Assembly (NCBI GenBank): GCA_964187785.1 | Contig: OZ076419.1 | Coordinates: forward strand, 7,688,001-7,752,000 | Reading direction: 5' to 3' | Length of the DNA stretch: 64,000 nt | Source of the DNA: Amphiscolops sp. MND2022 | Lineage: Eukaryota | Part shown: one piece after another, positions 17,800 through 50,462 of the stretch | Numbering within the stretch: the stretch's first letter is position 1 | Layout of the letters: each line of letters starts with the position of its first letter | Made by a program: the position numbers and the translations under genes | The notes under the pieces: model-generated | The model's input: the letters and a program-made list of their open reading frames with translations, nothing else | Told to the model about the DNA's origin: nothing | Database searches by the model: none

Positions 17800-20700
17800 T
17801 GTAACATATCCATGTTACCATTGACCTGAAAAAGGGCATCGTTGATGGAATTTACCCAACAAGGAACGTTCATCACCCAAGAGATTATCGAACTTGACCA
17901 GCAAAATAAGCAATTTATTCCCAATCATCAAATATTTAAACTCTCATAATAATCATGTTTTACCATATTTGGTGCGGCATTTTATAAATATTGATCACCA
18001 CTTCCTTCAAACAAACGGGAAACAAGAAGTGCCAAAATTATAGATTGCAAGAAGAAAAAAGACTGACACACCAACCGAGAGACTTGCTTGCGAGAAGTTG
18101 AATATAACTTCAGTTGAATATTGTATTTGCTCTAATTTAAATCTAGAACAAAATCATCAACTTAACTCGTTTTTCTCTGTTTCTGAAGAAAAATATCAAA
18201 ATTCTACGATCGACAAAAGCTTCTACACCATCAACCGAACCCAACGCGTAGAAAAGGGAAGCTGAATACCTTGTAAAAACAGAGAACTAACTTCTTCCAA
18301 AAAAATAACTGGAACTACATTAAAACATAGGCGCAAAGGAATTTGCGCACGGCTTCGAGCGACAGGTCCCGCAGCCATAATTGACTATCATCATGTGCAT
18401 TTGAACCATATTACCAAGTTATTAGCTATGACGAATAGCTAAGGTTATATACGGCACGAGAATGCTCAAAATACAATGAAATTGAAAAGAATTGTGGGTA
18501 TTAATCCTATGAAGCTTAACTTTTTCGGCCTTTACCACTATATAAAAGGAAGGGCTGCCCTAGTTATCAATAGGACGGTTGATATGTGCCATCACTAGCA
18601 AGTATACTTTCAGTTCTAAAAATTAGCTGAATTGTGCATCAAACAACCTTCCAGCATCAGTGGGCACCATTGGAAACGTATTCCAGAGGATGAATAACCT
18701 GTTAAAATTTGCGAATGGGGCAAAATCACGAAAAGATCCGAAATCATTTTTGTTTTCAATACAACGTAGTTGAATATCATTGCACAGCGAGGTGTGAATA
18801 TAACTTAGTGTTGTCTTGATTTAATCGTTGCATATGACATCAAATCTCTCAGGAATATTGCGGTAATGCATAATACCTTCTGTGCAGATATTCACTGGAT
18901 AGAATACGTTAAGAATGGAAATTTCGCGGTTTTACGCTTCAAACAACCACATCATCAATAACTAACGGTGAGTAAGTACTCCAGTGGTCCAATATGATCT
19001 CACTCTCGAAAACCCATACATCGAGAGGTCTGAAAAAAACTTTGGTTTCCGACATCAAAAATGGACAAACAAACTATTCACCGAAAATTTTACAGGCATG
19101 AGACAAAGCAAATCAATGAGCAATTATGGAGTATATGATTCAATGTACATTGCCGATAGGTCTTCGAGCATTTTTACTTTTTCTACTAGCAGTATAAATA
19201 AATAAAAACCTTCCAAGGATGAAGTCAGCATTTTTAACAACAGCCGTGCAAATAAGACAGTAGGAGGGTTACTAGGGTTAATCAGACCGCAATCTATGCA
19301 TTTTTACAAGACCGATCCGGTAACTTCGTCTATTTCACTCCTTCCTAAGATTAGTTTGGAAAATGTATATTTAAAAATTGAAGGATCAAATATTCATTTA
19401 TTTCAAGATTCGTAGTAAAGCACAATTTGTATAATATACAATGAACTGCCCGAAAATCCAACAACATTTAAATCTTCACCAACAAATTCAGTTCCAACAA
19501 TTTGTTGAGTTTTTGGATGGTCTCGAAGTATTAAGGCTCCGAGAAAATAGGCCAAAACTTTTACAAAATTGATTAAAGAGAGCAATTTATCAAAAATTCA
19601 AAAAATTTGAAAACTTTTTTGTCTCTATCTGTCCGACGTAAACGTTGTGACTTTCCAATTTCTAACTTTGGGCAGCTAAGCAGACCTGTTATCGAGTAGA
19701 AACACCACTGCTTGGATTAGAACTGATTGCTACTTGAAAATAGGTTGAGAAATTTTTTACGCAAAAAAACCGAAAATTTTTCCTATTTTTAATGGTCATT
19801 TTCGCAAAGCCCAATAATTCTAGGATAAAAAAACTTTCACCAAATTAAAGAAAACATCGTTTTACGTCGGTTAGTACCTACATCGGGCCAATTCGCTGTG
19901 GTTTGCGAAAAGAAAAATAGCAAAATCGACAAAAACCCTAAAAATTTTCGAAAATTTCGCGCTTTCGAAGCTAATAAAATCGCGCCGGTGGAAAATTTTC
20001 GGAAAGTTTTCACACGGTTAGAAAGAGCATCAAGTTGCGTTTCTTTTTGGAAAGTTTGGATGGTCGCGGAAAAATAGGCTCTGAGAAAATAGCCTTCAAT
20101 TAATACAAATGCAGAGGGTATGTCACGCGAAAAAAAAACCAAAACGCTAGTAAACGCGGAACAATAGAGACTTAGTCGCTTCGCTTCGCTCGCTCGAAGC
20201 CTCAAAAAAACGTCACCATATGGGCATCTCGCTCCGCTCGTGCCCCAAAAACTAAACGCAAACAATAAGGCCCCTCGCTTCGCTCGTCGCCCTAAAAACG
20301 TCACCATATGGGCATCTCGCTCTGCTCGTGCCCCAAACATAGGCGCAAAGGAATTTGCGCACGGCTTCGAGCGACAGGTCCCGCAGCCATAATTGACTAT
20401 CATCATGTGCATTTGAACCATATTACCAAGTTATTAGCTATGACGAATAGCTAAGGTTATATACGGCACGAGAATGCTCAAAATACAATGAAATTGAAAA
20501 GAATTGCGGGTATTAATCCTATGAAGCTTAACTTTTTCGGCCTTTACCACTATATAAAAGGAAGGGCTGCCCTAGTTATCAATAGGACGGTTGATATGTG
20601 CCATCACTAGCAAGTATACTTTCAGTTCTAAAAATTAGCTGAATTGTGCATCAAACAACCTTCCAGCATCAGTGGGCACCATTGGAAACGTATTCCAGAG

Positions 20701-22255
20701 GATGAATAACCTGTTAAAATTTGCGAATGGGGCAAAATCACGAAAAGATCCGAAATCATTTTTGTTTTCAATACAACGTAGTTGAATATCATTGCACAGC
20801 GAGGTGTGAATATAACTTAGTGTTGTCTTGATTTAATCGTTGCATATGACATCAAATCTCTCAGGAATATTGCGGTAATGCATAATACCTTCTGTGCAGA
20901 TATTCACTGGATAGAATACGTTAAGAACGGAAATTTCGCGGTTTTACGCTTCAAACAACCACATCATCAATAACTAACGGTGAGTAAGTACTCCAGTGGT
21001 CCAATATGATCTCACTCTCGAAAACCCATACATCGAGAGGTCTGAAAAAAACTATGGTTTCCGACATCAAAAATGGACAAAAAAACTATTCACCGAAAAT
21101 TTTACAGGCATGAGACAAAGCAAATCAATGAGCAATTATGGAGTATATGATTCAATGTACATTGCCGATAGGTCTTCGAGCATTTTTACATTTTCTACTA
21201 GCAGTATAAATAAATAAAAACCCTCCAAGGATGAAGTCAGCATTTTTAACAACAGCCGTGCAAATAAGACAGTAGGAGGGCTACTAGGGGTAATCAGACC
21301 GCAATCTATGCATTTTTACAAGATCCGGTAACTTCGTCTATTTCACTCCTTCCTAAGATTAGTTTGGAAAATGTATATTTAAAAATTGAAGGATCAAATA
21401 TTCATTTATTTCAAGATTCGTAGTAAAGCACAATTTGTATAATATACAATGAACTGCCCGAAAATCCAACAACATTTAAATCTTCACCAACAAATTCAGT
21501 TCCAACAATTTGTTGAGTTTTTGGATGGTCTCGAAGTATTAGGCTCCGAGAAAATAGGCCAAAACTTTTACAAAATTGAATAAAGAGAGCAATTTATCAA
21601 AAATTCAAAAAATTCGAAAACTTTTTTGTCTCTATCTGTCCGACGTAAACTTTGTGACTTTCCAATTTCTAACTTTGGGCAGCTAAGCAGACCTGTTATC
21701 GAGTAGAAACACCACTGCTTGGATTAGAACTGATTGCTACTTGAAAATAGGTTGAGAAATTTTTTACGCAAAAAAAACGAAAATTTTTCCTATTTTTAAT
21801 GGTCATTTTCGCAAAGCCCAATAATTCTAGGATAAAAAACTTTCACCAAGATAAAGAAAACATCGTTTTACGTCGGTTAGTACCTACATCGGGCCAATTC
21901 GCTGTGGTTTGCGAAAAGAAAAATAGCAAAATCGACAAAAAACCCTAAAAATTTTCGAAAATTTCGCGCTTTCGAAGCTTATAAAATCGCGCCGGTGGAA
22001 AATTTTCGGAAAGTTTTTACACGGTTAGAAAGAGCATCAAGTTGCGTTTCTTTTTGGAAAGTTTGGATGGTCGCGGAAAAATAGGCTCTGAGAAAATAGC
22101 CTTCAATTAATACAAATGCAGAGGGTATGTCACGCGAAAAAAAACCAAAACGCTAGTAAACGCGGAACAATAGAGACTTCGTCGCTTCGCTTCGCTCGCT
22201 CGAAGCCTCAAAAAATTAGAAAAATCCGAAGAAGCCAAAAACAAGAGATCGTACA
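17800..22255 (+). repeat. 5' LTR of element A (~570 bp, interrupted at 18326-22209)
   Basis: 17800-18325 plus 22210-22255 align to 34794-35355, with about a dozen substitutions and a 6-bp indel by eye. Confidence 0.93.
18326..22209 (-). mobile_element. Tandem dimer of ~1.88-kb Helentron-type non-autonomous element (H2)
   Basis: Near-identical units 18326-20203 and 20338-22209. SubTIRs GGCTTCGAGCGA/TCGCTCGAAGCC, GCGCAAA-GGAA-TTTGCGC hairpin at the 3' end, insertion into an A/T run absent from the 3' LTR. Confidence 0.8.
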
Positions 22256-22267
22256 TGGTGACAAGGG
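22256..22267 (+). promoter_or_regulatory. Primer binding site of element A
   Basis: TGGTGACAAGGG immediately after the LTR end ...GTACA. Primer tRNA not identified. Confidence 0.75.
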
Positions 22268-22852
22268 TGCCGGAGACAAACACTCAGCACTAAGCCAATC
22301 AACGATAGCTAGAAGAAAACGACAAAACTGGCTCTTCCTCAACACTACTTGGACCACGAGTGTGCAGAACATATCGTTGACATTTTTTGGCCCTCATCAG
22401 TTGGCGATCATCTCACGATACGAAGAATTTACTGCTCATACGGAAAACCAATTTTGCTTCTTGGCATCACAGCAACACAGCCATACGAAGTCTTTCATTT
22501 GCTTGTCCACAAACACACACCAATTTGGAAGGAATTGGAGGAAATTTGAAGAATTGCTCGAATACTTGGAGACCTTTTTACCACTGGATTGACGAGGAAG
22601 TCACCATAACTACAATCAACCAAATACGGTGACGAACTTTGGGGAACTTTGAAACTATCGCCACAACACGTTCACGAAAGGTCATGAAGGGTGAATTGAG
22701 AGTCATCCTTTGTGAGTCATACTTCACTTGATTTCATCTATGTTAATTGTTCATCTTTTCACCTATCATCCGTGATTTTTCTGTGGATTAACTTGAAACC
22801 ACATTGTAGCGAAAAACAAGTGAACAGTAAACTGTGCATGAATTAAAAAAAA

Positions 22853-24000
22853 ATGGCCGAGGCGAACACTACAATCAGTTTAAAACAGTTCGGCGGTGAA
22901 TCAGAAAATTGGCGCGATTTTGAATCACAACTCCGCAGAATCATTCAAGTAGCAAATGTAGACGCTGCCAATCAAGTTGACTACTTGAAACTTCATCTTA
23001 AAGACAACGCTTTGCAATATTTTCATACTCTTGACGCTGACACACGCGGAAATTTGAATAGATGTCTAAACGCTTTGAAAACGCATTTTTGTAATCCAAC
23101 GTATAAAGAATTGTACACTATTCAACTTGAAAACATGAAATACAATCACAAAACAGAAAATCCTGAAGCATTCTTAGTGAAATTACAAAATTTAGCAAAC
23201 TCCGCCTATCCAGACGCTGAAGCCCTTCCAGTAGAGGCTGCTAGAGATCAAACAGATGGTGAGAGAGATAGAGTTGCAGCTGAAACTGCTGCTAACACTG
23301 AAAGGCTCCGCTTTTCACAACTGCAACGAGAGCAACATGTAAAACGGCTATTCTTGAAAGCAATGCCAAATTTTATTAGACGAAATTTACTAGAACAACC
23401 AGAGGAAAGAACCGTAGGCGACCTTTGCACCTTAGCACGTCGTACGTCTTATTTGAACCAGATTTGCGAAGTAGATGATTGGAACGCAAACGCATTCAGC
23501 GAAGTCAGTAACGTACAAAGTGAAGATTACTTGAATGTTTTGGCTGAAATTACTGAAACTCATAGTGCAATGGAGGACAAAATGAACAATTTCATTAAAA
23601 AAGTGGATGAAAGTCTGTCTTTGAATGCCATTCAGACTAATTCACGCGGTTATCCTCGAGCACAAAATTATTTGCCAAGATATCAACAGAATCACTATCG
23701 AGGCAATCAATTCCGCTCGAATTACCAACGAGGCAGAGGCTATTATCAAAACCGGGCGTACTCGTCCTATCAAAACCAATCCTATCGACCACGATATGGA
23801 CAACGGTTTCACGCACTCCAAAATAATGATGCTAGTTTGGCGCAAGGACATTACCAAGCGCAAAACTTCCATCAGAGTCACGGCCAGACTGAAAATCCGG
23901 AACCGTTAAATGCCACAGGTGGATCACATACATGCACTACACTAAAATAATATGTCATAGATGCGGTGGTCCTGATCATATGGCCCGAGACTGTGTAGCA
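22853..24000 (+). pseudogene. gag: Gag of element A (frameshift before zinc knuckle)
   Basis: Retrotransposon capsid-like N-terminus (KQFGGESENWRDFE...YLKLHLKDNALQYF). CHRCGGPDHMARDC knuckle in a shifted frame at about 23952-23993. Confidence 0.88.
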
Positions 24001-24152
24001 GCAAGCCCAAAATCGCAACGTGGTGCAAAATTCCCGTTCTCAAGAGAACAAAAAAACTAAATCCTCCACACCAGAAAAACAGGTCATTCCCAAAATCATC
24101 CTCATCACCATATTTAGCAGATAAACGTTCTATAGAAAAAGATTTAGAAAAT

Positions 24153-27020
24153 TTGAATATAAAATCCAAAAAATTAAATAAAAATGATACCCTGCGACAT
24201 CTATTGAAAGCAAAAGAGTTAGCCTTACAGGGTCCTTTAGAGCATCTGGACCAACAATTCGAAGAAGGTCAATACGATAAAAATTTGAAAGCAAAAATTT
24301 CGAAAGATCTAGCTGAAGAATGTAGACAATTTACGAAGAAAAAAGTGAAACAAAAAATCCGATTATCGCAACTTAACGAAATTGTTCATGAACTGCGAGA
24401 CACTTTTGATTCAGAAGATTCTAGAAATCTTTCGGATGCAGTAATTCCGTTAGAAGGTGACACCTTACTTTATGTACCCTTGAAGTTTAGCTCAAAACTC
24501 CGGCGACGCTCGTTGATTGATACAGGTGCGTGCTCTAGTGCGATTCCAGAGTCTCTTTACACAGAGCTGATGACAGATGCAAACGTAATGAAAACATTGG
24601 TCAAAAACGCGAAATGTAAAACAGTTCGGATGGCCTCCGGCAAATCATTACCAGTACTCGGCGAAATCGTTTTGAAACTTTTTATTCATGACAGCGAATT
24701 TGAAGAAACTTTCATGATTCTCCCAACAATGAATAGTGTTATTTTGGGAAGTCCATTTTTTCAAAATATCAAGTAGGAATTTTTCCAGGGGAAAAGTTAC
24801 TCAAGTTTCCTGATATAACTACAACTGAACGAAATAAAAAAAGCTATAACCAGGCGGAAAATTCACTCCAAAACGATAATTGTAGCTGAAACATCTCAAA
24901 GTCACGATCAAGCCAAATTCCCAAGAAGTTTTTGAATTTGAAACTTTCACGACACGATGAAAAATTCGAAGGAATGACAGGAATGGTTTTACCTGATTTA
25001 CAGTTTGAACGGAAGCACGATCTTTGCTTGTCATCTTGTCTAACAACAATAGCAACTAATAATGAATTACAATTTCTGGCTTTGAATTTAACAGATCATG
25101 TAATCACTGTCTCAAAAAATCAACCAGTCGCAAAGTTCCAGATTTTAACTCTCGATGAAGCTGAATCGTTGATACCTATACCGGCAGAAATGTTGACACT
25201 TGATAAAGCTATGAAAGGTGAAGTATTTCAGGAAATAAACCAACTAGTCCAATGTGAAGACAAAATTAAAGTACGTCAACCACAAAAACCGAAACCTGAC
25301 TACAATAATCTATGGTTTCCCACACCTGAAACGTGTGATAATCCTGAACAATTGACACCAATACCGCGTAAAATTTATGAACAACTTCATTTCCAGCAAC
25401 TCGAACAAAAAAACCCTAAACAAAATGAAGCGGATCGAAACGAATTTCTATCTAAATTCGATTGGAAGAATTCGGTTTTGACATCAGATGAAATCAGCGA
25501 GCTCGAAAACCTTCTCAACGAGTTTGAAGATATTTTTGCTAAACACCGATTCGACGTTGGTTATAACACCGAAATGAAAATTAAATTGACGCCCGAACAC
25601 TCAAATGCAGTTTATAAAGTCCGCCAACGCCAATACACCTCCGAGACGAAATGATGGTTGAATTGGCTTTTTGCAATACTACGGCATTATAACAACACTA
25701 ACAAATTCGAAGTACAGTAGCCCAATTTTCGCTCAGCGAAAGCCGTCGGGAAAATTGCGAATTTTGCATGACCTCAGAAGAATAAATCATTTGCTGCGAC
25801 ATGATTATGCCAACCACAATTTTCCTATTTCCAATATGACGGACGCTGTTAACCATTTTGCGGGAAAGAAATTGTTCACAAAATTAGATTGTTCGCAAGC
25901 GTACCCCTGCGTTCAAATGGCAGACCCGCTCTCGGTACAATTGCTTGCATTCAATTTCGCATCCAGGACATACGCATACAAAGTTTTGGCACAAGGTTTG
26001 AGTAAATCCGTTACGGGATTTAGTGCCTTTGTACGAAAATACTTGGATCAATGTCTTGCGGCTAACCTCTGCACCCAATTCATGGACGACATTGGGAGTG
26101 GAGCAGAAAACTTTGCGGAAATGAAAGAAAACTTGACCAAAATTTTCGCTAGTATCCGAAGTTCCGGACTCAAGCTTTCACCAGAAAAATGTCAATTTGG
26201 AATGTCGCAAATTTCTTTCTTAGGCAATACGATCACATCTGAGGGAATTACGCCCGAAACGAAGAAATCAGAAAAGTTTCTAGACAAAGTCAAAATACCG
26301 CAAACGGTGAAACAAGTCAAAAGACTCATCGGCTTCACACAATTTTTTCGAAGTTTCATACCAAAGTTAAACGAGAAGCTGCTACCCTTCTACAAATTGT
26401 TGCGAAAGGATGTCGATTTCAGAGTTCAAGACGACCATATCGAAAAATTTAAGCAAATTAAAACTGATCTTTCAAAAGCAACGACAACAACATTGCGTTT
26501 GGCAAAACCAAATCAACAGTACGTTATCCTTTGCGATGCTAGCTACCATTGTAGTGGTTTTGTACTCATGATAGAGGACTACATTGACAAGACGGCAGAA
26601 TCAAAAACGAGAAAGTACGCACCAGTTTCTCCCGGATCAAAAACCTTTAATGAATCACAATTGAAAATGTCTATTTATTGCAAGGAATTTCTTGCCTTGT
26701 ATTTCGCTCTTGATGCTTTCTCGCATTTCATTTGGGGCTGTGAGAAACCAGTATTGGTGCTCACTGACAACAAAAGCCTGACATCTTTCTTCGAAACGAA
26801 AGAAATACATCCTTCTCTGTGGAACTTCTTAGATCGAGTCTTGGCATACAACATTACCTTGGCGCACGTCCCAGGTCGTGCAAATGCAGCCGCAGACTTT
26901 CTTTCACGCATGGAAACAGAACCAGGAGCAACACTACAGCTTGGACTAACGGATTCATTACCAGTCAGTCCGAGAGATAAAAGTTTCGATGACAGCCAAA
27001 ACACCAGTTATCTCAATTAA
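24153..27020 (+). pseudogene. pol: Pol of element A: protease, dUTPase-like segment, RT, RNase H (broken)
   Basis: LIDTGACSS protease, QFMDDIG RT motif, ILCDAS and VLTDNKSL RNase H, HVPGRANAAADFLSR. Stops or frameshifts near 24776, 24930, 25654 and 27020. Confidence 0.93.
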
Positions 27021-27151
27021 CGAGCTTCAATTCAACAACACAACCTCAGAGAAAAACTCAACTCATGCGGAATATGAAAATATTTTGAACAAATTTCCAG
27101 GAAAAAAAACAATTCCCTGAGCTTACGAATTTTATTCGTGAAAAAGAAAGC

Positions 27152-29194
27152 ATGTGCGACTGGGAATACACAAGCTTAACAAGAGCAGAAAACAACGCAC
27201 TCCACGAACCTGATCCACTAAATGATTTTGAGATCTCTGCACATGCCACAACCTTAAACCTGAAAGCAGAACAATCGAAAGACCATACACTGCGCAAAGT
27301 TCGTAAATGGCTAGAAGAAAATTTGGACATCGACATAACCTACGAAACCCAAGAAATCAAGAAGTATGCAAAACACCGCAGTCGCCTGGTACTCGAAAAT
27401 GGTATCATCTACAGAAAATTTTTCAACGACGTTGGAGTTGTCTCGCATTTACAATACTGTGTTCCAAAGCATCTTCGATCCGAAATTTTATACAGACTAC
27501 ACAATTCCCCAACTAGTGGTCATCTGGGAATCAATAAAACAGTATACGAATTTCGAAAACGTTTCTATTTTCCAAGCTTCACGGAATATTTGCTCAACTA
27601 TGTGAAAAACTGCTCAACTTGTTTGCAAACGAAAAACATTCAGCAGAAAAGGTTACGACCACCTCTAGAATCGTTAGCATCTGATCAAAACTTACCCGGA
27701 GATGTGATGCAGATTGATCTCGTTGGTCAATTCAATGCACCGGTATACAAATACGCACTAACAGGAATCGACGTCTTTTCGAAATACCTGTTCGCGGTGC
27801 CGCTGTCTAGCATCAGCGCCGAGATTGTAGCAAAAGCGCTAGTTTCCATATTTCTGAAACACAGTTACATACCTAAACTAATTCTAGCAGATTTAGGTAC
27901 AGGTTTCCCATCCAAGCTAATGCACGAGTTGACAAACATGCTGGAAATTAAAATAAATCATGCATCTTTAAAACACGCACAAACTGTTGGTGCAGTTGAG
28001 AGAGCACATAGTGCATTCAAACGGATTTTGAAGATTAACTCAACCAGTGCATGGTCTAACTGGCATAAGTTTGTGGATATTGCAACGTTTGTACACAACA
28101 CATCTTACCATGTCTCAATCGGTACCACGCCAAGTTCAATATTTCATGGCCGAGAACCCTTGAAATCCATTGATTTGAGATTCAGTAAACATGTAAACTC
28201 GTCTCAACCATCGAGCGACTTTGTGAATGACTTGCAAGACACTCTTGTTCAGCAGTTTTGCGAAACAAAATCTCGCATTTTGAATTCATATCATCGTTAC
28301 CGAAACTACTATTATCGAAAAGCGGAAGCTCAACCGTTGAAAAAACACGAATACTGCTTGCTTTTGAACCCGTTGCTCACTGATCAGTCTAGCACTATGT
28401 CTAAAACAGTGCAGTCATGGCTGCCTCTCTACCGAGTCGAGCAGGTTCTCACGAAATCCAATTATATCATTCGAAAGGTAGGAACGCCGTTCACTCAATG
28501 CGTTCATAGACTCCGTATTAGGCCAATAAAATTACAATATACCGTTGAAGATTTGCCGAGACTTGATCCTTCCGAGATCAAACCTGATCCATCCTTAAGT
28601 CAATTTCGGAGTGAACCAGGTCTATTCGACAATGAATTGCCACAGCTGTTGAATGAACATCACACAAACATTGAAACACTCAACTTGCAGGACAGTGAAC
28701 CACAAATTGAAGTGACAACCACCCTATCATTTCCAATAGTACAACCAGCATTGGCGCTCACTAGAAGAGAACCAAACGCTCCAAGAGACAACACAACAGA
28801 CTTTAATTTGGAACGTCTCTTTGAGCAACCTGATGTGCAAACAGAAACACAGCGACCTAGACGTTCTACACGACTACAGGCGCGAATTCATCCTCGCGTT
28901 CCGTCACCAACGGCAACACCGACATCACACACGGTGTCTTGGTTCTCTGATGATGACGAAATGGCGCGAACTCTAGGTGATCAAGCTAGAGCTGCTCGAA
29001 GAGCACTTTTGTCTTCACAATTTGAAGCTAATAGAAAAACTTTAGAAGCGGTAGAATCAATGCAACAGAACACACATTCTCAACCGGTAACGAGATCCAA
29101 ATCACAAAAAACCACAAGAACTAACATTACCTTTCAACGTGAGGCAAATAAATCCAATTATTTTCTTAGATCAAACAACTATGATCGACAATGA
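27152..29194 (+). CDS. pol: Integrase of element A (HHCC zinc finger, DDE core, GPY/F-like region, long tail)
   Basis: HNSPTSGHLG...CSTC, QIDLVG, LADLG, AVERAH. Separated from the RT by frameshifts. Confidence 0.92.
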   Translation: MCDWEYTSLTRAENNALHEPDPLNDFEISAHATTLNLKAEQSKDHTLRKVRKWLEENLDIDITYETQEIKKYAKHRSRLVLENGIIYRKFFNDVGVVSHLQYCVPKHLRSEILYRLHNSPTSGHLGINKTVYEFRKRFYFPSFTEYLLNYVKNCSTCLQTKNIQQKRLRPPLESLASDQNLPGDVMQIDLVGQFNAPVYKYALTGIDVFSKYLFAVPLSSISAEIVAKALVSIFLKHSYIPKLILADLGTGFPSKLMHELTNMLEIKINHASLKHAQTVGAVERAHSAFKRILKINSTSAWSNWHKFVDIATFVHNTSYHVSIGTTPSSIFHGREPLKSIDLRFSKHVNSSQPSSDFVNDLQDTLVQQFCETKSRILNSYHRYRNYYYRKAEAQPLKKHEYCLLLNPLLTDQSSTMSKTVQSWLPLYRVEQVLTKSNYIIRKVGTPFTQCVHRLRIRPIKLQYTVEDLPRLDPSEIKPDPSLSQFRSEPGLFDNELPQLLNEHHTNIETLNLQDSEPQIEVTTTLSFPIVQPALALTRREPNAPRDNTTDFNLERLFEQPDVQTETQRPRRSTRLQARIHPRVPSPTATPTSHTVSWFSDDDEMARTLGDQARAARRALLSSQFEANRKTLEAVESMQQNTHSQPVTRSKSQKTTRTNITFQREANKSNYFLRSNNYDRQ

Positions 29195-29866
29195 GAAAAC
29201 GCAAACGATTAAAACGCTATCGAGCAAACGTAGGAAAGGCATTGCAGCTACAGTAAAAATCTTTTGCATACTGAAAAACTGAAAATGAGAAAACAACCTT
29301 TTTCGGTTAGGACAAGTGTTTGACAACAAACTTCCTTTGAACATACGCCTCTTGAACAACACAAACGTTTCTGGATCTACAAAGCCTCGAGCGCACGATT
29401 CAAGCCTCCAACAGAAATAGCACGAGAATCCATAATTTTGTGGAAAAAAAAACATTTTCACAATGAACGGTTGCAAAAACTGCGCTCGAGAAATCTTGGA
29501 GACGCTTATATTCAAGTCATTGCTGGCTTCCTTTTGCCACCGAGCGCCTTTCGGATGAGAAATAACTTTTTTCCTTCGTGGGTTCTTTTCACGCTGTTTT
29601 TCACCAAATACCATCACAAAAACAACTAGACTATATAATGCGGAATCATTCTTGCCAAAACCTGGAAGCTGATTGCAGAAGCTTGAAAGCGAAAATACTA
29701 CAGCTCCGCATACTTTATAATTTCTAGCAAAACTTACCTTTTGAAACCTCCATTGAACATCATGGGAAGTAACTTTTGGATGGATTTCATTAGTAATTCC
29801 GTCCAGGACCTTTCTCAACCCATCAATTATTAAGAGCCTAACGAACATTTGCACTTGACTAAGCAC
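29171..29866 (-). CDS. Antisense 231-codon ORF of unknown function in element A
   Basis: Long open frame in AT-rich DNA with no comparably long plus-strand frame. No motif recognised and no upstream ATG. Confidence 0.35.
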   Translation of the reverse strand: MLSQVQMFVRLLIIDGLRKVLDGITNEIHPKVTSHDVQWRFQKVSFARNYKVCGAVVFSLSSFCNQLPGFGKNDSALYSLVVFVMVFGEKQREKNPRRKKVISHPKGARWQKEASNDLNISVSKISRAQFLQPFIVKMFFFPQNYGFSCYFCWRLESCARGFVDPETFVLFKRRMFKGSLLSNTCPNRKRLFSHFQFFSMQKIFTVAAMPFLRLLDSVLIVCVFSLSIIVV

Positions 29867-30645
29867 CCCAATTACAGGGACAAAATCACAATCAAAAATT
29901 CAAAAAAATATATACTTATAAATTTTGAACGGAAAAAAGACGAGCATGTTATGGAAAACAAGACAATGTTTTCAAAAAAAGACGGACAATCAAAAATACA
30001 TCCTCGCCAAACCGTCAGATGGTTTCTCAGTAGGCCATATCGGGTCGCCAAAACCGTATTGTAAGATTTCTTCAAAAGAACTAACTTTTTTCGATGTAAT
30101 AGTTTTTGCCTCAATGAGAAATAATTGACCGACCGATAAAATACCAAATCATGATACTTTTAACCAATACGTCAATTCTAGCCTCGACACATCCACGTGA
30201 TCAGATCAAAGTACACATCACTGGAGTGTCTGTTGCCATCGAGCTATTTCGTTACAAGAGCTAACTTTTTTTGGGTCGAACGCTACACGCCCAATACCAA
30301 TCAAACATTTAGTCAACAGCTTTCAAAACTGTTAAAACAAAACACCTCCCCCCTGGCAAGAGCCCTGACAATTCGGTATACTGACACCGAGGACTTCAGC
30401 AACCAACGAGATGCAAAAAAAGGAACAAAATTTTTTTTCAGTTGGCCACACGAACAATGTTTACAACCAACACAAACAGTTGCTCACTCATGACATTTCA
30501 CAACACTATCCAGTTCAGTCCACTCACAACTCTGTAAAACAAAACAAAAATCATAAACGCAGGGAACAAACTCACCAAAAAAAGAGGGTTTATTCATTGC
30601 TCAGGCCTTTCTTCTTTAAGATACTCTTCTTTACTTTTGGCAAGT

Positions 30646-31686
30646 TCATCTGTTGTTTTTGCCCCTTTCGGAAACGCCGCTTTTTTGTGGGGGAGCCTCT
30701 ACGTCAAGTCCACGTTCCACCTGGGAACGTAATTGCATCGCTGCCTCTGACTCGCTCTGCTCTTCCTGCCGTTTGTTTGCAGCCTCCTCTTCCTCTTTCT
30801 TTTCAATAATAGCTGAGATTTGGCTCATACTCTTCTCTTTCCGCAACTCGCGGAGTGTTTTTGCCGAGAGCCCAGTGGCGAAATAATTCAGTGTTTGCCG
30901 ACTGCGCTTGGTATCGTTCCTGTCCATGGCTTCCCAGCCAGTGACAAAAGCTGGTCCCTCTGATACTATAAGGACTGAATGGCAACACAAGGCTGGCTGC
31001 GCCAGAAAAAGATCACTGGCCGACACAAAGATCTTGACATTCTCTTTCCACCCTTTAGGAGGACCATTAAGGATCAGATTAACTGTGCACTCCATCGTTT
31101 TGGTGCTTTTCAGCAAAAGTTGCGAATACTTTCTCCTGTTGGCGATGAGGAAAATTTTTAAACCCACAGGAGTGTAGGAGAGCGAATCATCCCCTCCTTC
31201 CTCTACATGCCCATCGGTATGCCATCGTCCGAGTTTTATGATTCCACTACTGTGGTGACGGGATAGATTTGAGGGAACTGAGTATTCCGCTAGATCGGTC
31301 ACACGCATGTTCCACGCTTTTGATTGAGGCGCCCACTCCTTATCGCCCAATCTACTGATGAGCCTCGATTTACCTGCTTCTGTAAATTTGTTGAAAATCT
31401 TCATGACATCTTTCTCAGTGCGGCACCTTTTGACCGCTTCCACAAAATCAACATTCAAATTAAACACATTTGCATTTCTCACCGCTATTGGCTTTTGGAA
31501 CCAGGACGAATTTCCGGTCGAATCTACATAAAGTCCAAAGTTCTTCCTGCAGGCGCATGATATAATTTCCCTCCAATCTTTGGCTTCGGGGCAATTCAGA
31601 ACAGGCACATGTTGCCAACCAAGTTCCTCTAGACCTTCTCGGCTGCCGAAATTTTCAATCAGATAATTCAATTTGCTTACTGCCAT
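30646..31686 (-). CDS. Antisense JmjC-domain (2OG-Fe(II) oxygenase, KDM2/7-like) protein, 346 aa from first ATG
   Basis: HTDGHVEEGGDDSLSYTPVGLKIFLI aligns without gaps to KDM2A [27 protein letters not shown]. Third ligand in QPALCCHSV. Confidence 0.75.
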   Translation of the reverse strand: MAVSKLNYLIENFGSREGLEELGWQHVPVLNCPEAKDWREIISCACRKNFGLYVDSTGNSSWFQKPIAVRNANVFNLNVDFVEAVKRCRTEKDVMKIFNKFTEAGKSRLISRLGDKEWAPQSKAWNMRVTDLAEYSVPSNLSRHHSSGIIKLGRWHTDGHVEEGGDDSLSYTPVGLKIFLIANRRKYSQLLLKSTKTMECTVNLILNGPPKGWKENVKIFVSASDLFLAQPALCCHSVLIVSEGPAFVTGWEAMDRNDTKRSRQTLNYFATGLSAKTLRELRKEKSMSQISAIIEKKEEEEAANKRQEEQSESEAAMQLRSQVERGLDVEAPPQKSGVSERGKNNR

Positions 31687-31903
31687 CGCTATCTCAAATA
31701 CGTGCAAAACTTAGCATGCTTCAAACACGCAACTAGATAATTTTCCAATGAATTATCTTGCTTCATCATTGCTAAAAGTATTTCGCAAAAAAAAACAAAT
31801 TTCACCGCTGAGACTTTAATTATTCTCCACTCTTTCTTACGCTAACAACTAACTGGTATTTGATAAAAACATGTAATCCTGAATGAAGTAATCAATAAAA
31901 AAA

Positions 31904-32263
31904 ATGCAACCAGAGCAAAACAACAGGGCTGAAGAGACAGTTCTTCTACTGGAGGAATCACACCTCATTCCTGGAACATCGACAGTCACATTCTACCGTC
32001 GCATCATGCGCACCACCAGTGAAAGCACGAGAATGCCTGTCAGAATACACAGCGTCACCCATGAATGATCTGTCCGTACTCCACTGGGCCCAATGGTAGT
32101 AGTGGTGGCACAAAATATGTGCCTCGAGGAACAGGTTACAATCTCTCCCTGGTGCGCAAAGCACAAGACGTTTCAACAGCACTGTAAATTGTGGGTGACA
32201 TTTCGGCAATTCATTCTTGGCACAACACAACTTCTAAAAAAACATTCACAACAAAACCTTTAA
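31904..32263 (+). pseudogene. Small 119-codon ORF upstream of env with one internal TGA
   Basis: ATG at 31904 after an A-run, single in-frame TGA at 32066-68, WCAKHKTFQQHC motif, stop at 32261-63. Confidence 0.4.
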
Positions 32264-34507
32264 CAAACTTTTTTTGCGTTTTAGTCATTTCCGAGCTTCT
32301 CACGCTGTCTCTTTCTGACAATTCATCGAAATGGGCATCAGACATTATTCCTGATCACGAGGCAAATGCTCTTTCGGAAAATGGTATCATCTTCGATCAT
32401 GAAACAAAAATCCTACTAGCGGAAAAATTCATAAATGTTGAATTTCTGGTACCATTTCCGAACTTGGACATACAATTGCACGAACATCTCAATGAATCAG
32501 TTCACGCCTTGTACCAACTTTGGAAAGAACCGAGTATATTTTGTGACTTGACATTCTCCAGTAATTTCACAACAAATGACTCAGTTTTTGACATTAAGTG
32601 GATTTTACATCACGTGCAAAATGAATCACAATTAGCTTCCACCGATCTCCAGAACTTACGTAACGAAATTTCAATACCATTGCATCCTAACGAAGAACCA
32701 CAATTCGGAAGCCAAAGTCGAGTAAAGAGAGCAGCGCCATTAGCATTTGCTGCTCTAGCTTCAGTTGGTTTATTCGGAAGTGGGATTCTGCTAGGCAGTA
32801 GTGAAGGCTGCGGACTTAGAGGAAAACAAGACAAAGCGAAGGAAAATGCAAACAACATACTTCGACTGGCCCGCATTTCCGAAAACATCGCTGAGAATGT
32901 TTACAAACTACGATCCGAATCTAACGAAAAATTCTACCTGCTGACGAATGAAGTCTCCAAGTTACATCAAATACAACAAGAACTAGCTGAAACACAAGAC
33001 AACTGGAAGATAATTGAAAATCAATTTGCTGTGTTTCAAAACAACATTCATCTATTACTAGACTGTACACAACTTCTATTCTCACGACAGCAGATGAATT
33101 TTAATTATGATACTATGGCAGCACTGTTAACAATGACACATACAAACATTAAAGCTTACTGTAGTGCATTGTACGCCTACCAGTTGAACATTGTGAATGC
33201 GATACCAACAATTTTGGCGATACCAACAGTTTTGGGACAATTTTTACCAATGTCACTAGTGCCGCGACAATCACTACTGAAGACATTAGAAGAAGTCATT
33301 ATCGAACAAGGTCAAGCTGACGATCGTTTAACATTGGCCATTCCACCAAAAGAAATTCTAGCGTACTACGAAGCGAAACTTCTGACAGATGTCACCACAT
33401 TGGAAGAAGGTCTCCTAATGACTTTATCAATACCATTGGCATCAAAACAAACATCGCTTACAGTTCATAGAGCAACACCGATTCCAATGCCGCAACCAGA
33501 ACCGACACTGGCGATGAAATGGAAAACAGAAACTCAGTTCCTCGCTATCTCGGAAGACAATCTAGAAACAGCTCTTTTGACCGAATATGATTTGGCGAAT
33601 TGCATTGGATCAGCAACCTATCAAATCTGTCATCGTTCAATTGCCACTGAACGCGGTCACGGATCGTGTTTGGCAACATTGTTCTTCAAAGGATCGTTAG
33701 AATCAATTCAAGAATGTGAAACCGAAGTGATTGAACTACCGGCTGCAGAAAAAGCAGAAAACCTTGGCTATGGAGTTTGGTTAGTGACATCGGCAACAAA
33801 AGCCTACACGTTATATGAGACTACTTCAGACTCAAACACGGCAACAGGCTTGACCAAATACCCAGGTTGTAATATTTGCATAATTACATTAGCATGTGGA
33901 AAACAACTCACGGGACCACATAACAATTCGATCTGACCTACAAACATGTAAAAGTATACCAGCGATCAAAGTTCATGTTAATTTGCCTGACCCACTGAAA
34001 CATCTTTTGAGCGAAGTTCGACCAGTAGACGAAATGCCATATTTTCCAACAAAGTCGGCTGCAGGAGTTCAAATGCTGACAGAACTTCGGCAAAAACTTC
34101 TTACGAGCCCGAAACTAGAATCAACGGACAAACTAATGGAAATAGCGAGACCCATCACGAGCAAAATGAGATCATTACGACCAACCCTGCGGGATGAACT
34201 CAGTTCGTATTCGACCTGGAAAACATCAATTGGAATGAGCATCATTTCATTTTTTGGATCAATGATACTTTATTTCATTTTCATGTTCTTCTATCATAAA
34301 TGCAAAACATGCCAAAAATATGCCCCTGACCATATGCTCAAGTTAAACGCTGGCACAAACGCAAGCACAGACATTCAACAACGAGAGACAGACACAACCA
34401 TTATCAGACGACGTGGCTCGACTGGGGACACGCTAGCCCCTGCTCAATATACATTACCTGCCCCCTTTATGAAATCGAAAAATAATAAAATAACAAAACA
34501 CTTTTAA
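32191..34507 (+). pseudogene. env: Env: class I fusion glycoprotein, one frameshift at ~33920
   Basis: Signal-like FFCVLVISELLTLSLS, furin site RVKR (32719-30), fusion peptide AAPLAFAALASVGLFG, heptad region, Cys-rich ectodomain, TM IGMSIISFFGSMILYFIFMFFY. GPH|ITIRSDL continues in the next frame. Start codon unresolved. Confidence 0.88.
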
Positions 34508-34781
34508 AGAGCTTTTTCTTATATAATTCAAGCGTAATGAATGTGTAATCATGTATCAACTGCTATTGAAAAATCATAAACAATGACTGTTTAGCTGTAT
34601 ATCATCCCTTTTAAATTGTATATCATATGACTCTTCATTTTCTCCCTTCTCCTTGACCTGGACTTCTGCGTGTGGATCGCCATCTTTTGTTCTTCTTTCT
34701 ACATAACGATCACTCCTAATCTGGAAATTGCTTCTACACGATACCGACCGGTCAATTTTTCAAACCCACTGGGAAGCTTCT

Positions 34782-34793
34782 GAAGTTGGGTAG
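34782..34793 (+). promoter_or_regulatory. Polypurine tract of element A
   Basis: GAAGTTGGGTAG directly before the 3' LTR TGTAACA. Confidence 0.6.
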
Positions 34794-35355
34794 TGTAACA
34801 TATCCATGTTACCATTGACCTGAAAAAGGCCATCGTTGATGGAATTTACCCAACAAGGAACGTTCATCACCCAAGAGATTATCGAACTTGACCTGCAAAA
34901 TAAGCAATTTATTACCAATCCTCGAATATTTAAACTCTCATCATGTTTTACCATTTTTGGTGCGGCATTTTATAAATATTGATAACCACTTCCTTCAAAC
35001 AAACGGGAAACAGGAAGTGCCAAAATTATAGATTGCAAGAAGAAAAAAGACTGACACACCAACCGAGAGACTTGCTTGCGAGAAGTTGAATATAACTTCA
35101 GTTGAATATTGTATTTGCTCTAATTTAAATTTAGAACAAAATCATCAACTTAACTCGTTTTTCTCTGTTTCTGAAGAAAAATATCAAAATTCTACGATCG
35201 ACAAAAGCTTCTACACCATCAACCGAACCCAACGCGTGGAAAAGGGAAGCTGAATACATTGTAAAAACAGAGAACTAACTTTTTCCAAAAAATAACTGGA
35301 ACTACATTTAAAAAAATAGAAAAATCCGAAGAAGCCAAAAACAAGAGATAGTACA
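34794..35355 (+). repeat. 3' LTR of element A (562 bp)
   Basis: TGTAACATATCC...GAGATAGTACA followed by TSD CCCCA. Confidence 0.95.
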
Positions 35356-36044
35356 CCCCACATTCATTTCACCCCACATTCATTTCACCCCACAATCATT
35401 TCACCCCACGTTCATTTCACCTCATTTTCACTTCACACCATATTGTAATTATACAAAAACGTCTCGCCTTAATTAACCAATTAGCAATTAAACTTTGATG
35501 CCTACTGTCTTTGAGTCAGCTTCGATTTGATTGTCAGTTTCTGACCTGTAGGATTTTTTGCCGTAGAAACACCGAATAAGAAATTTTTTGCTGAAGATTT
35601 GCAACATCCATAATTGTAAATTTTGATTGACAGAAGAAAAATTTTTTTTCAGCGCCTTTTTCAGAAGTATTACAATTCCGATAAATGAAACTATTCGGTT
35701 TCGAATTTATGGTTCACATAGAAAGCATCGTTTGCTTATCTAATTGGTAATTAGATTCAAGACGCTTTTCTATTAGCTCTAAGATTGAAGTTGGGTGGCT
35801 TTAGTAATTAATCTGAGACGCATTTGATAATTTAAATGTGGGGTGAAATGAACGTGGGGTGAAATGAACGTGGGGTGAAATGAACGTGGGGTGAAATGAC
35901 ATGGGGTGAAATGATATGGGGTGAAATGAACGTGGGATGAAATGATACTAAACCCATAGATTGACTATGAGCAAAATTGAATTTCCATGTTGAACATGTT
36001 ACGAAGAATATTCAGAAACATGTTACGTGTGCATTAACCTATAC

Positions 36045-46890: not shown

Positions 46891-46895
46891 GCTCA

Positions 46896-50252: not shown

Positions 50253-50462
50253 CCGCATATTGCCGCATAGTCTTTCTTTGCATTCCGCATACTGCCGCAT
50301 ACTCTTCTCTTGCAATCCGCATATTGCCGCATATTCTTCTCTTGTGCTCCGCATACTGCCGCATGCTCGTCTTTGCTCGATCCGCATACTGCCGCATATT
50401 CTTCCTTTGCATTCCGCATACTGCCGCATACTCTTCTCTTGCAATCCGCATATTGCCGCATA
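50253..50462. repeat. Tandem array, 7 x ~32 bp, CCGCATAYTGCCGCATA core
   Basis: Seen directly, in the spacer between the divergent ORF3 and antisense gene. Confidence 0.9.

What the first reader, a model, noticed from the sequence alone, without database searches (positions are those of the whole stretch)
30590..31707. Env-bearing Gypsy retroelement carries its own antisense JmjC histone-demethylase-like gene
Seen: inside the TSD-bounded element A, between integrase and env, a minus-strand ORF contains T-D-G-H-V-E-E-G-G...G-L-K-I-F-L-I. The first His is at 31209-07, the Lys lies 17 residues after it, and a second His lies 76 residues after it (QPALCCHSV, 30981-79). A shifted frame at the C-terminus reads PTKKRRFRKGQK...KVKKSILKKKG* (stop 30590-92). 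That is an NLS-like tail, suggesting a 1-nt lesion in the C-run near 30690. Knowledge (from memory): KDM2A uses T209, H212, D214, K229 and H284, with the same T(-3) and K(+17) spacing and H at +72; HxE occurs in other KDM families. So all Fe(II) ligands and two 2-oxoglutarate-binding positions appear intact. Inference: a retrovirus-like element captured a JmjC oxygenase and expresses it antisense, possibly to remove repressive histone methylation from its own proviruses (anti-silencing, analogous to plant VANC proteins). The substrate could instead be RNA or a protein hydroxylation target. I know of no described LTR element with JmjC cargo. Caveat: this copy has about one lesion per kb, so the intact ORF alone does not show selection.
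Basis: partly seen in the sequence, partly recalled or inferred. Interest (0 to 1): 0.93.

Follow-up and report, generated by a model that had tools for sequence, protein, structure and literature searches.

The report
Retrovirus-like element carrying a JmjC gene
A family of retrovirus-like mobile elements carries, on the opposite strand between its integrase and envelope genes, a conserved gene whose predicted fold and catalytic residues match histone demethylases, so these elements may erase the chromatin marks their host uses to silence them.

Summary
Window 30646-31707 (-) is a 353-aa ORF with T164, H167, E169, K184 and H243 at the stated codons. Pfam and a small profile find nothing. An AlphaFold2 model (pLDDT 90.6) matches only JmjC lysine demethylases (KDM7A, PHF8, PHF2, KDM2A) in its top 28 PDB hits. 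A 150-sequence profile reaches PHF8/KDM7/PHF2 by sequence and aligns those five residues with PHF8's T-x-x-H-x-D, Lys and second His. A distant member folded separately gives the same answer. The gene lies antisense between integrase and an F-type env in five element lineages from three samples. It sits in a ~3 kb cassette that was swapped whole between two otherwise 93-95% identical elements (proteins 41% identical). The family has 230 clusters, none named by any source. It also occurs free-standing and on an adenain-bearing contig. In the window copy one frameshift cuts off the conserved basic tail, and gag, pol and env are broken too. Demethylase activity and an anti-silencing role are inferred, not shown. 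No paper describing an LTR element with a JmjC gene was found.

The parts
17795..17799 (.). Target-site duplication, left copy (CCCCA), inside a 16-bp minisatellite
   Evidence: The same pentamer follows the 3' LTR at 35356-35360. The repetitive context makes the exact length uncertain.
17800..18330 (+). 5' LTR, cut short near its 3' end by a nested insertion. Its last 47 bp reappear at 22209-22255.
18331..22208 (.). Nested ~3.9 kb insertion with an internal ~2.0 kb tandem duplication. Absent from copies L004 and L005. Not part of the canonical element.
22256..22273 (+). Primer-binding-site-like sequence starting TGG directly after the LTR end
   Evidence: read from the sequence; the tRNA was not identified
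22853..24057 (+). gag (broken: 1 frame change relative to the uninterrupted 402-aa version in L005)
   Evidence: No Pfam hit, but 96% identical to the gag-position ORF of L006.
24153..29194 (+). pol: protease (domain about 24477-24764), RT (about 25737-26234), RNase H (about 26508-26834), integrase zinc-binding and core domains (about 27461-27961). Broken: 4 frame changes in the RT-RH-IN part relative to the uninterrupted 1381-aa version in L005.
29330..32313 (.). Exchangeable cassette between integrase and env. It has no nucleotide similarity to the corresponding 2.9 kb of the otherwise 93-95% identical element L006, apart from a 55-nt island (catalytic-motif codons) and a 59-nt island at 29372-29428.
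30590..31707 (-). JmjC-like gene (X353). Likely ATG at 31686-31684. Catalytic-type residues: T164, H167 (31209-31207), E169, K184, H243 (30981-30979). Broken: 1 frameshift separates the body from the conserved basic C-terminal tail.
30589..30594 (-). AATAAA polyadenylation-type signal at the end of the gene, overlapping the stop codon of the tail frame
   Evidence: sequence motif only; use not shown
31708..32313 (.). Region upstream of the JmjC-like gene, head-to-head with the 5' end of env. Presumed promoter region, and part of the swapped cassette.
   Evidence: position only; no promoter evidence
32191..34507 (+). env, class-I F-type features: signal-like segment, R-V-K-R site followed by a fusion-peptide-like segment, C-terminal membrane anchor. 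Broken: 1 frame change relative to the uninterrupted 764-aa version in L004.
   Evidence: No Pfam or PDB sequence hit.
34768..34790 (+). Purine-rich tract directly before the 3' LTR (polypurine-tract position)
   Evidence: read from the sequence
34791..35355 (+). 3' LTR (565 bp, TGTAAC...GTACA)
35356..35360 (.). Target-site duplication, right copy (CCCCA)

Best explanation
The 353-aa minus-strand ORF is a real gene for a previously unannotated family of JmjC-fold Fe(II)/2-oxoglutarate oxygenases, nearest in structure to the KDM2/KDM7/PHF8/PHF2 histone lysine demethylases. It is a standing accessory gene of a clade of env-bearing Ty3/Gypsy (retrovirus-like) elements. It sits antisense between integrase and env, inside a ~3 kb cassette that carries its own upstream region and an AATAAA signal. 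That cassette is exchanged whole between related elements. Shown: the fold, the conserved metal and cosubstrate residues, the constant position, the cassette swap, and long-term conservation of the reading frame. Inferred: the gene is transcribed from the integrated DNA by its own promoter. Its basic C-terminal tail takes the protein to the nucleus. There it removes repressive lysine methylation (most likely on histone H3) from chromatin, including that of its own copies, and so delays or reverses host silencing. Cassette exchange and the deep divergence between cassettes would then reflect an arms race with the host's silencing machinery. The window copy is a decayed relic: its JmjC-like gene has lost the tail through one frameshift, and gag, pol and env are broken too.
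For: Fold: AlphaFold2 gives mean pLDDT 90.6 and pTM 0.88. Foldseek against the PDB ranks 28 JmjC demethylase chains first (ceKDM7A, KIAA1718/KDM7A, PHF8, PHF2, JHDM1A/KDM2A; E 7e-10 to 3.5e-7, probability 1.00), then YxbC, TYW5 and KDM5B. Replicate: the distant member P0095 (pLDDT 85.1) has only JmjC lysine demethylases in its top 50. Residues: in 30 diverse members T164, H167, E169, S175, G182, K184, Q237, P238, H243, V245 and T247 are at least 90% conserved. In 150 members, which include many gene-call fragments and decayed copies, H167 is kept in 93 of 119 spanning sequences, E/D169 in 103 of 121, K184 in 104 of 121 and H243 in 92 of 117, with most of the rest being alignment gaps. The 150-sequence profile hits only PHF8, KDM7 and PHF2 among 177,635 PDB sequences (best E 0.046) and aligns T/H/E/K/H with PHF8's T-x-x-H-x-D, G-x-K and H-A-V-L-T. 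Position: the gene is antisense between integrase and env in the window, L003, L004, L005, L006, L009, L011 and L012, from three samples. Cassette: L006 is 96/94/85/91/93% identical in gag/PR/RT/IN/env protein and 93-95% in DNA, but its JmjC-like protein is 41% identical and the 3 kb around it does not align. Selection: six lineages keep uninterrupted ORFs although third codon positions are saturated (0.61-0.71 different, against 0.41-0.55 at positions 1+2). Within the family the gene is the least diverged segment (1.7-1.9% against 2.5-3.8% for flanking cassette DNA) with dN/dS 0.43-0.55. A basic tail is conserved across lineages. Transcription-unit features: an ATG, and an AATAAA just past the stop.
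Against: No Pfam model matches, neither JmjC, Cupin_8 nor any other, for any of 30 members. The sequence link to PHF8 is marginal (E 0.046). Foldseek TM-scores are modest (0.37-0.44), because the protein has its own N-terminal domain and C-terminal helices. No histone-reader domain (PHD, chromo, Tudor) is present, so targeting is unexplained. There are no expression data, and an antisense transcript could form double-stranded RNA with the element's own RNA and invite silencing. The within-family dN/dS rests on about 19 substitutions and is not significant. Among the four copies of the window's own subfamily that I read, none has an unbroken JmjC-like gene: 1 frameshift in the window and L003, 1 in-frame stop in L004 and L005. 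JmjC enzymes also include protein and tRNA hydroxylases, and TYW5 and YxbC are among the hits, so histone is not the only possible substrate. Free-standing relatives exist (L001, L002), so the family is not exclusive to these elements.
Confidence: 0.55

Rival explanations
1. Same fold and same place in the element, but the enzyme is a JmjC-type hydroxylase (or a demethylase of a non-histone substrate). It would act on a host protein, a protein of the element, or an RNA, for example to modify a host restriction or translation factor, rather than acting on histones.
For: The JmjC superfamily includes hydroxylases. TYW5 (a tRNA hydroxylase), YxbC and a putative asparaginyl hydroxylase appear from rank 29 onward. 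There is no histone-reader domain.
Against: The best 28 hits for X353 and all top 50 for P0095 are histone lysine demethylases. The only sequence-level PDB hits are PHF8, KDM7 and PHF2.
Confidence: 0.25
2. The protein opposes silencing without catalysis, as has been argued for fission-yeast Epe1, by binding heterochromatin proteins or recruiting activators. On this view the JmjC fold is a scaffold.
For: Epe1 is a JmjC protein with anti-silencing activity and reported non-enzymatic functions (PMC7192584, PMC6317313). X353 has long acidic and basic C-terminal helices that could be interaction surfaces.
Against: The metal and 2-oxoglutarate positions are the best-conserved columns of the whole family, which is hard to explain without catalysis. 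The one copy that lacks them (L001 19351-20058) looks like a decaying fragment.
Confidence: 0.1
3. The gene is a host or other-element gene that these elements pick up repeatedly by recombination, as a passenger of no use to them. The constant position only reflects a tolerant spot in the element.
For: Free-standing relatives lie between tandem-repeat arrays (L001, L002). Element-borne and free-standing versions are interleaved in the tree. Element B carries an unrelated antisense gene in the same relative position.
Against: Five element lineages whose RT and integrase are only 44-68% identical all keep an uninterrupted copy with the active-site residues, in the same orientation and slot. A useless passenger would be lost from elements under strong size and replication constraints.
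Confidence: 0.08
4. The ORF is a chance open frame on the antisense strand and the motif is a coincidence.
For: None beyond the lack of a Pfam hit.
Against: There are 230 homologous clusters, a confident fold and conserved motifs.
Confidence: 0.01

Closest known systems
KDM2/KDM7 (JHDM1, PHF8, PHF2, KIAA1718) JmjC histone lysine demethylases
   Same: Best structural matches for two independent family members. They are the only PDB sequences reached by the family profile, with T(-3), H, acidic(+2), K(+17) and the second His aligned.
   Different: Sequence identity is only 11-15%. No Pfam JmjC hit. No PHD, CXXC, F-box or other accessory domain. X353 has its own N-terminal domain of about 110 residues and a basic tail. 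The acidic ligand is Glu rather than the Asp seen at that position in the PHF8 alignment. It is encoded by a mobile element rather than a host locus.
Fungal DNA transposons encoding TET/JBP dioxygenases (KDZ, Plavaka, EnSpm, Helitron and others; PMC12730594)
   Same: A mobile element carries an Fe(II)/2-oxoglutarate dioxygenase that could erase a silencing mark. The gene has moved between element lineages. The proposed role is escape from silencing.
   Different: Different branch of the dioxygenase superfamily (TET/JBP acts on DNA bases, JmjC on proteins or RNA). DNA transposons in fungi, against an env-bearing LTR retroelement here. Function is inferred in both cases.
VANC anti-silencing proteins of Arabidopsis VANDAL (Mutator-like) transposons
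   Same: An element-encoded factor that reverses epigenetic silencing of its own family, with rapid diversification between families.
   Different: VANC is a sequence-specific DNA-binding protein with no oxygenase fold. It is found in plant DNA transposons.
Epe1 of Schizosaccharomyces pombe (PMC6576747, PMC7192584)
   Same: A JmjC protein, discussed in the literature alongside PHF2-type JmjC proteins, whose biological role is anti-silencing at heterochromatin.
   Different: A host gene, recruited through HP1/Swi6. No relation beyond the fold was tested here.
Antisense genes of complex retroviruses (for example the HBZ-type gene of deltaretroviruses; general knowledge) and antisense ORFs of plant Ty3/Gypsy elements
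   Same: A protein-coding gene on the minus strand of a retroelement.
   Different: Those genes encode regulatory proteins, not enzymes, and are driven from the 3' LTR. Here the gene sits in an internal cassette with its own flanks.
JmjC/cupin proteins of giant viruses and of an insect filamentous virus (BFVD hits)
   Same: Virus-encoded JmjC-fold proteins exist.
   Different: These are much weaker structural matches (E 2e-6 to 6e-4) from large DNA viruses. No relative of the family was found in 2.9 million viral contigs.

Membership tests
JmjC-domain Fe(II)/2-oxoglutarate oxygenases | Double-stranded beta-helix (jelly-roll) catalytic core | tested here: met
   AlphaFold2 pLDDT 90.6 with a run of strands across residues 116-261. 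Foldseek probability 1.00 to 28 JmjC demethylase chains in the top 28. Replicated with P0095.
JmjC-domain Fe(II)/2-oxoglutarate oxygenases | H-x-D/E ... H metal-binding triad | tested here: met
   H167, E169 and H243 are at least 90% conserved in 30 members and align with PHF8's H-x-D and second His.
JmjC-domain Fe(II)/2-oxoglutarate oxygenases | 2-oxoglutarate contacts: Thr/Ser at -3 and Lys about 15-17 residues after the first His | tested here: met
   T164 and K184 are at least 90% conserved and align with Thr and Lys of PHF8. That these PHF8 positions bind 2-oxoglutarate is from general knowledge of the KDM2/7 structures.
JmjC-domain Fe(II)/2-oxoglutarate oxygenases | Match to the curated Pfam JmjC or Cupin_8 models | tested here: not met
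   No hit for X353 at E up to 10, nor for any of 30 members at E up to 1. So this is a new sequence family within the fold, not a member of the curated Pfam family.
JmjC-domain Fe(II)/2-oxoglutarate oxygenases | Oxygenase activity dependent on Fe(II) and 2-oxoglutarate | not testable with these tools
   No biochemical data.
KDM2/KDM7-type histone lysine demethylases | Methyl-lysine histone substrate and chromatin-reader modules | tested here: inconclusive
   These are the nearest structures, but no reader domain was detected and the substrate groove was not analysed.
Ty3/Gypsy LTR retroelement with env (retrovirus-like) | LTRs with TG...CA ends, target-site duplication, and PR-RT-RNase H-IN domain order | tested here: met
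Ty3/Gypsy LTR retroelement with env (retrovirus-like) | Envelope gene after pol with class-I fusion-protein features | tested here: met
   Signal-like segment, conserved R-x-[KR]-R followed by a hydrophobic segment, C-terminal anchor, 13-15 Cys, conserved in L004, L006 and L009. There is no homology to a named env family, so membership of a particular env family such as the insect errantivirus F-type is not shown.
Nested transposon (the cassette as a separate mobile element) | Terminal repeats and its own target-site duplication | tested here: not met
   Only 8-9 nt chance matches between the cassette ends. The cassette is present in all copies.

The most novel reading that the evidence does not exclude
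A whole clade of retrovirus-like elements encodes its own histone lysine demethylase, and removes repressive methylation from proviral chromatin. The gene lies in a plug-in cassette that related elements exchange, with relatives also found free-standing and on an adenain-bearing (Polinton-like) contig. A neighbouring element family uses the same slot for an unrelated conserved gene. The slot would then be a general counter-silencing locus of these elements, comparable to the accessory-gene regions of complex retroviruses.
Probability: 0.35. Interest if true: 0.92.

Novelty: new variant of a known kind. Interest (0 to 1): 0.82.

Why it matters
Hosts silence retroelements largely through histone and DNA methylation. 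Known counter-measures encoded by the elements themselves are few: VANC in plant DNA transposons and, by inference, TET/JBP in fungal DNA transposons. An LTR retroelement with an envelope gene that carries a demethylase-type enzyme would extend this idea to retrovirus-like elements and to histone marks. It would also define a new, unannotated JmjC family of 230 clusters with no Pfam model and no name in any source. The swapped cassette gives a natural comparison for studying element-host conflict, because near-identical backbones carry very different enzymes. The claim can be tested directly with descriptive data, namely stranded transcriptomes and chromatin maps of the host species.

Tried and rejected
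- Pfam on X353 and on 30 members gave only chance-level hits (SPT2_N, DUF4760). I rejected these.
- PDB sequence searches with the single protein and with the 30-sequence profile found nothing. Only the 150-sequence profile reached PHF8/KDM7/PHF2.
- The word-indexed protein search with the profile added little.
- No source gives a name or accession for any member.
- There were no relatives in IMG/VR viral contigs. The metagenome scan gave three short contigs without context.
- Rfam found nothing in the window.
- I considered that L001's X-like ORF next to a SET-domain ORF might be a JmjC-SET fusion. The X-like part lacks both His ligands and looks decayed, so I did not build on it.
- I considered that the cassette is a nested transposon. 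It has no terminal repeats or duplication.
- I looked for a DNA-level donor of either cassette among the fetched loci and found none.
- I tested whether element B's antisense ORFs are distant relatives of the JmjC-like family. They are not (hhalign probability 0.1-0.2%).
- The antisense 231-aa ORF at 29171-29866 is not conserved as an ORF in L004 or L005 and looks non-coding.
- Within-family dN/dS is too weakly supported to use as proof. Cross-lineage dS is saturated.
- Five literature searches found no LTR element with a JmjC gene. This covers the open-access library only.
- The host organism was not identified.
Full report
**1. The observation**

The ORF tool lists a 353-aa minus-strand ORF at 30646-31707. 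Its translation contains T-D-G-H-V-E-E-G-G-D-D-S, then G-L-K-I-F-L-I-A, then Q-P-A-L-C-C-H-S-V. Counting from 31707:
- H167 is on 31209-31207.
- K184 is 17 residues later.
- H243 is 76 residues later, on 30981-30979.
- T164 is three residues before H167.

The listed TTG start comes from the bacterial code. On the minus strand an ATG at 31686-31684 (residue 8) is the likely start. An AATAAA lies at 30594-30589, a few dozen bases past the stop.

**2. The element**

- LTRs: direct repeats at 17800-18330 and 34791-35355, starting TGTAAC and ending GTACA. They are flanked by CCCCA at 17795-17799 and 35356-35360, inside a 16-bp minisatellite.
- The 5' LTR has lost its last bases to a nested ~3.9 kb insertion (18331-22208). 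That insertion is absent from copies L004 and L005. The end of the LTR and a TGG-initiated primer-binding-type site follow at 22209-22273.
- Pfam finds aspartic protease, RT, RNase H, integrase zinc-binding and integrase core domains in Ty3/Gypsy order.
- The ORF after the cassette has no Pfam or PDB sequence match. It does have a signal-like segment, an R-V-K-R site directly followed by a hydrophobic segment, a C-terminal membrane anchor, sequons and 13-15 cysteines. The cleavage-site arrangement is conserved in L004, L006 and L009. This is the layout of a class-I, F-type envelope protein, so "env-bearing" is justified by features rather than by homology.
- Breaks in the window copy, judged against the longest versions seen in relatives: gag 1 frame change, RT-RH-IN 4, env 1, the JmjC-like gene 1. 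None of the copies I read is unbroken in all genes.

**3. What the protein is**

Sequence methods alone almost fail.
- Pfam finds nothing for X353 or for 30 family members.
- PDB sequence searches find nothing with the single protein or the 30-sequence profile.

An exhaustive profile search finds a family of 230 clusters at E <= 1e-3, with 35 at E <= 1e-30. In 30 long members the columns T164, H167, E169, S175, G182, K184, Q237, P238, H243, V245 and T247 are at least 90% conserved. In 150 members, many of them fragments or decayed copies, the shares among sequences spanning each column are:
- H167: 93 of 119.
- E or D at 169: 103 of 121.
- K184: 104 of 121.
- H243: 92 of 117.

Most of the remainder are alignment gaps.

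An AlphaFold2 model built on the 30-sequence alignment is confident: mean pLDDT 90.6 and pTM 0.88. Foldseek against the PDB puts 28 chains of ceKDM7A, KIAA1718/KDM7A, PHF8, PHF2 and JHDM1A/KDM2A in the top 28 places (E 7e-10 to 3.5e-7, probability 1.00). YxbC, TYW5 and KDM5B follow. TM-scores are modest at 0.37-0.44, which I attribute to the protein's own N-terminal domain and C-terminal helices.

Two further tests agree.
- The 150-sequence profile hits just nine PDB sequences at E <= 10. All nine are PHF8, KDM7 or PHF2 (best E 0.046). The printed alignment places the family's T, H, E, K and second H on PHF8's T-x-x-H-x-D, G-x-K and H-A-V-L-T.
- The most distant member with genomic context, P0095, was folded on its own alignment (pLDDT 85.1). 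All of its top 50 PDB hits are JmjC lysine demethylases, including nucleosome-bound KDM2A.

I conclude that this is a new sequence family with a JmjC fold and a complete set of metal and 2-oxoglutarate positions. The Pfam JmjC membership criterion is not met, so I call it JmjC-fold or JmjC-like, not a member of the curated family.

**4. Is it part of the element?**

Other copies come from the same sample.
- L003 is 98.8% identical and shares flanking DNA, so it is a duplicate of the locus or a haplotype.
- L004 and L005 are about 95.4% identical to the window and 99.7% to each other. They lack the nested insertion.
- All three have the gene antisense between integrase and env.

More diverged lineages show the same layout, with homologous gag, PR, RT, IN and env.

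| Locus | Protein | Sample |
|---|---|---|
| L006 | P0014 | same as the window (ERZ25074608) |
| L009 | P0019 | ERZ25071359 |
| L011 | P0028 | ERZ25071359 |
| L012 | P0020 | ERZ26859043 |

Against L009, RT is 57-68% identical, IN 53%, env 44%, gag 34% and the JmjC-like protein 31%. The gene is therefore an old, standing component.

**5. The cassette**

The L006 element is almost the same element as the window's.
- Protein identity: gag 96%, PR 94%, RT 85%, IN 91%, env 93%.
- DNA identity: 93-95% over window 22218-29329 and 32314-35355.
- The JmjC-like protein is only 41% identical.
- Window 29330-32313 does not align with L006 9151-12022. The only islands are 55 nt encoding the H-V-E-E-G-G-D-D-S region and 59 nt near the integrase side.
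- The junctions are sharp and carry no terminal repeats or duplication.

So the whole intergenic unit has been exchanged between lineages: the gene, about 600 bp upstream (head-to-head with the env start) and about 1.3 kb downstream. Recombination during replication of co-resident elements would explain this. That mechanism is an inference.

In a neighbour-joining tree X353's nearest relative is P0002 (46%), a free-standing copy in L001. It is not P0014 (42%) from the near-identical element, and element-borne and free-standing versions are interleaved. L001 and L002 carry no recognisable pol or env. Their copies lie between arrays of ~170-370 bp tandem repeats.

A distant clade member, P0095, lies on a 14-kb contig with an adenain-type protease, which suggests a Polinton-like element or a DNA virus.

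**6. Selection**

Between the window/L003 pair and the L004/L005 pair, the gene is the least diverged part of the element.

| Segment | Nucleotide divergence |
|---|---|
| JmjC-like gene | 1.7-1.9% |
| Flanking cassette DNA | 2.5-3.8% |
| RT, IN, env | 3-5% |

dN/dS for the gene is 0.43-0.55, but it rests on about 19 substitutions and is not significant on its own. RT, IN and env give 0.21-0.42.

Across lineages, third codon positions are saturated (0.61-0.71 different), while positions 1+2 differ by 0.41-0.55. All six ORFs compared are uninterrupted. Together with the active-site conservation, this is the stronger evidence for long-term purifying selection.

**7. The C-terminal tail**

Relatives end in a basic stretch followed by a conserved N-L-P motif and more basic residues. 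In the window and L003 this tail is encoded in a different frame from the body. In L004, L005, L006, L009, L001 and L002 it is in the same frame. I neither locate it nor join the frames. L004 and L005 each have one in-frame stop in the gene instead.

**8. How it most likely works**

Shown:
- a JmjC-fold protein with conserved catalytic-type residues;
- a constant antisense slot;
- its own ATG and AATAAA;
- a conserved basic tail;
- cassette exchange.

Inferred:
- transcription from the integrated DNA by a promoter in 31708-32313;
- nuclear import through the tail;
- removal of repressive lysine methylation from chromatin, including the element's own copies, and hence delayed silencing.

The nearest structures favour histone lysine as the substrate. 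The absence of a reader domain, and the presence of hydroxylases among the lower hits, keep a non-histone substrate open. A non-catalytic, Epe1-like mode (PMC7192584) is possible but fits poorly with the active-site conservation.

**9. Comparison with what is known**

Five searches of the open literature found no LTR retroelement with a JmjC gene. The closest published parallel is the capture of TET/JBP dioxygenases by many fungal DNA-transposon lineages, with transfers between lineages and a proposed role in escaping methylation (PMC12730594). VANC of plant VANDAL transposons is a functional parallel without structural relation (general knowledge). Virus-encoded JmjC or cupin proteins exist in giant viruses, but they are weak matches, and no relative occurs in 2.9 million viral contigs. 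I rate this a new variant of a known kind: an element-encoded eraser of silencing marks, here in a new enzyme family and a new class of element.

**10. Side result bearing on the model**

A second, young Gypsy-type element lies on the minus strand of the window, with LTR segments 100% identical 14.65 kb apart. In the same post-integrase position it carries an antisense 358-aa ORF. That ORF belongs to a large conserved family (107 clusters at 43-98% identity, many with dozens of members). The family has no Pfam or PDB match and no relation to the JmjC-like family. The slot may therefore be a general site for accessory genes in this group of elements.

**11. Limits**

- The host species is unknown.
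- There are no expression or chromatin data.
- Model coordinates could not be inspected for active-site geometry.
- Contexts were obtained for 12 loci only.
- Frame changes in long-read assemblies can include assembly errors, so break counts are upper estimates.

I built no repaired, joined or consensus sequence. Break positions are not reported.

Noticed in passing
window 46894-62300 (minus strand); antisense ORFs at 54248-55324 (+) and 51196-52602 (+): A second, young Gypsy-type element (LTR segments 46894-47193 and 61546-61845 are 100% identical). It has two antisense ORFs after its integrase. The 358-aa one belongs to a large unannotated family (107 clusters, 43-98% identity, up to 44 members per cluster) with no Pfam or PDB match and no relation to the JmjC-like family. 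The 468-aa one was not searched for homologues.
   Followed up: partly
L011 12436-13203 (-): In the P0028 lineage, a Macro domain ORF (Pfam Macro, E 1.1e-5, 25.8 bits, above the 22-bit cut-off) lies on the pol strand between integrase and the antisense JmjC-like gene. This is a second unusual enzyme-type domain in this group of elements.
   Followed up: no
window 18331-22208: A nested ~3.9 kb insertion near the 3' end of the 5' LTR, made largely of a ~2.0 kb tandem duplication (18323-20334 and 20335-22150). It is shared with L003 and absent from L004 and L005. Its nature is unknown.
   Followed up: partly
L010 (14-kb contig, sample ERZ17099311), gene at 82-1074: A distant member of the JmjC-like family (P0095, 10 cluster members) sits at the end of a contig that also encodes an adenain-type protease (Peptidase_C5, E 1.4e-7) and a 1446-aa zinc-finger protein with a weak Endonuclease VII match. 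It may be a Polinton/Maverick-like element or a DNA virus.
   Followed up: partly
L001 5134-5893 (-), 9998-11005 (+), 19351-20058 (-): Three JmjC-like stretches lie within 21 kb and outside any recognisable retroelement. Each is bracketed by arrays of ~183-bp tandem repeats. The third lacks both His ligands and abuts a SET-domain ORF (18812-19354, Pfam SET E 1.1e-9).
   Followed up: partly
window 17768-17799, 35354-35444, 35838-35945: The element is inserted in a 16-bp minisatellite (unit CACCCCACATTCATTT), and an inverted array of the same unit lies about 500 bp further on.
   Followed up: no
window 7331-8350 (+): An uninterrupted 339-aa Tc1/mariner-type transposase ORF (HTH_Tnp_Tc3_2 E 7e-18, DDE_3 E 2e-14).
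   Followed up: no
window 29372-29428 and L006 11690-11748: A 59-nt island of 81% identity inside otherwise unalignable cassette DNA, on the integrase side. It may be a conserved cis-element or the true recombination boundary.
   Followed up: no
window 32191-32313 versus L006: The first ~41-47 codons of the env ORF, including most of the signal-like segment, lie inside the swapped cassette. The L006 env ORF is about 60 residues shorter before the cleavage site and shows no N-terminal hydrophobic segment, so the env start or its splicing may differ between cassette types.
   Followed up: no
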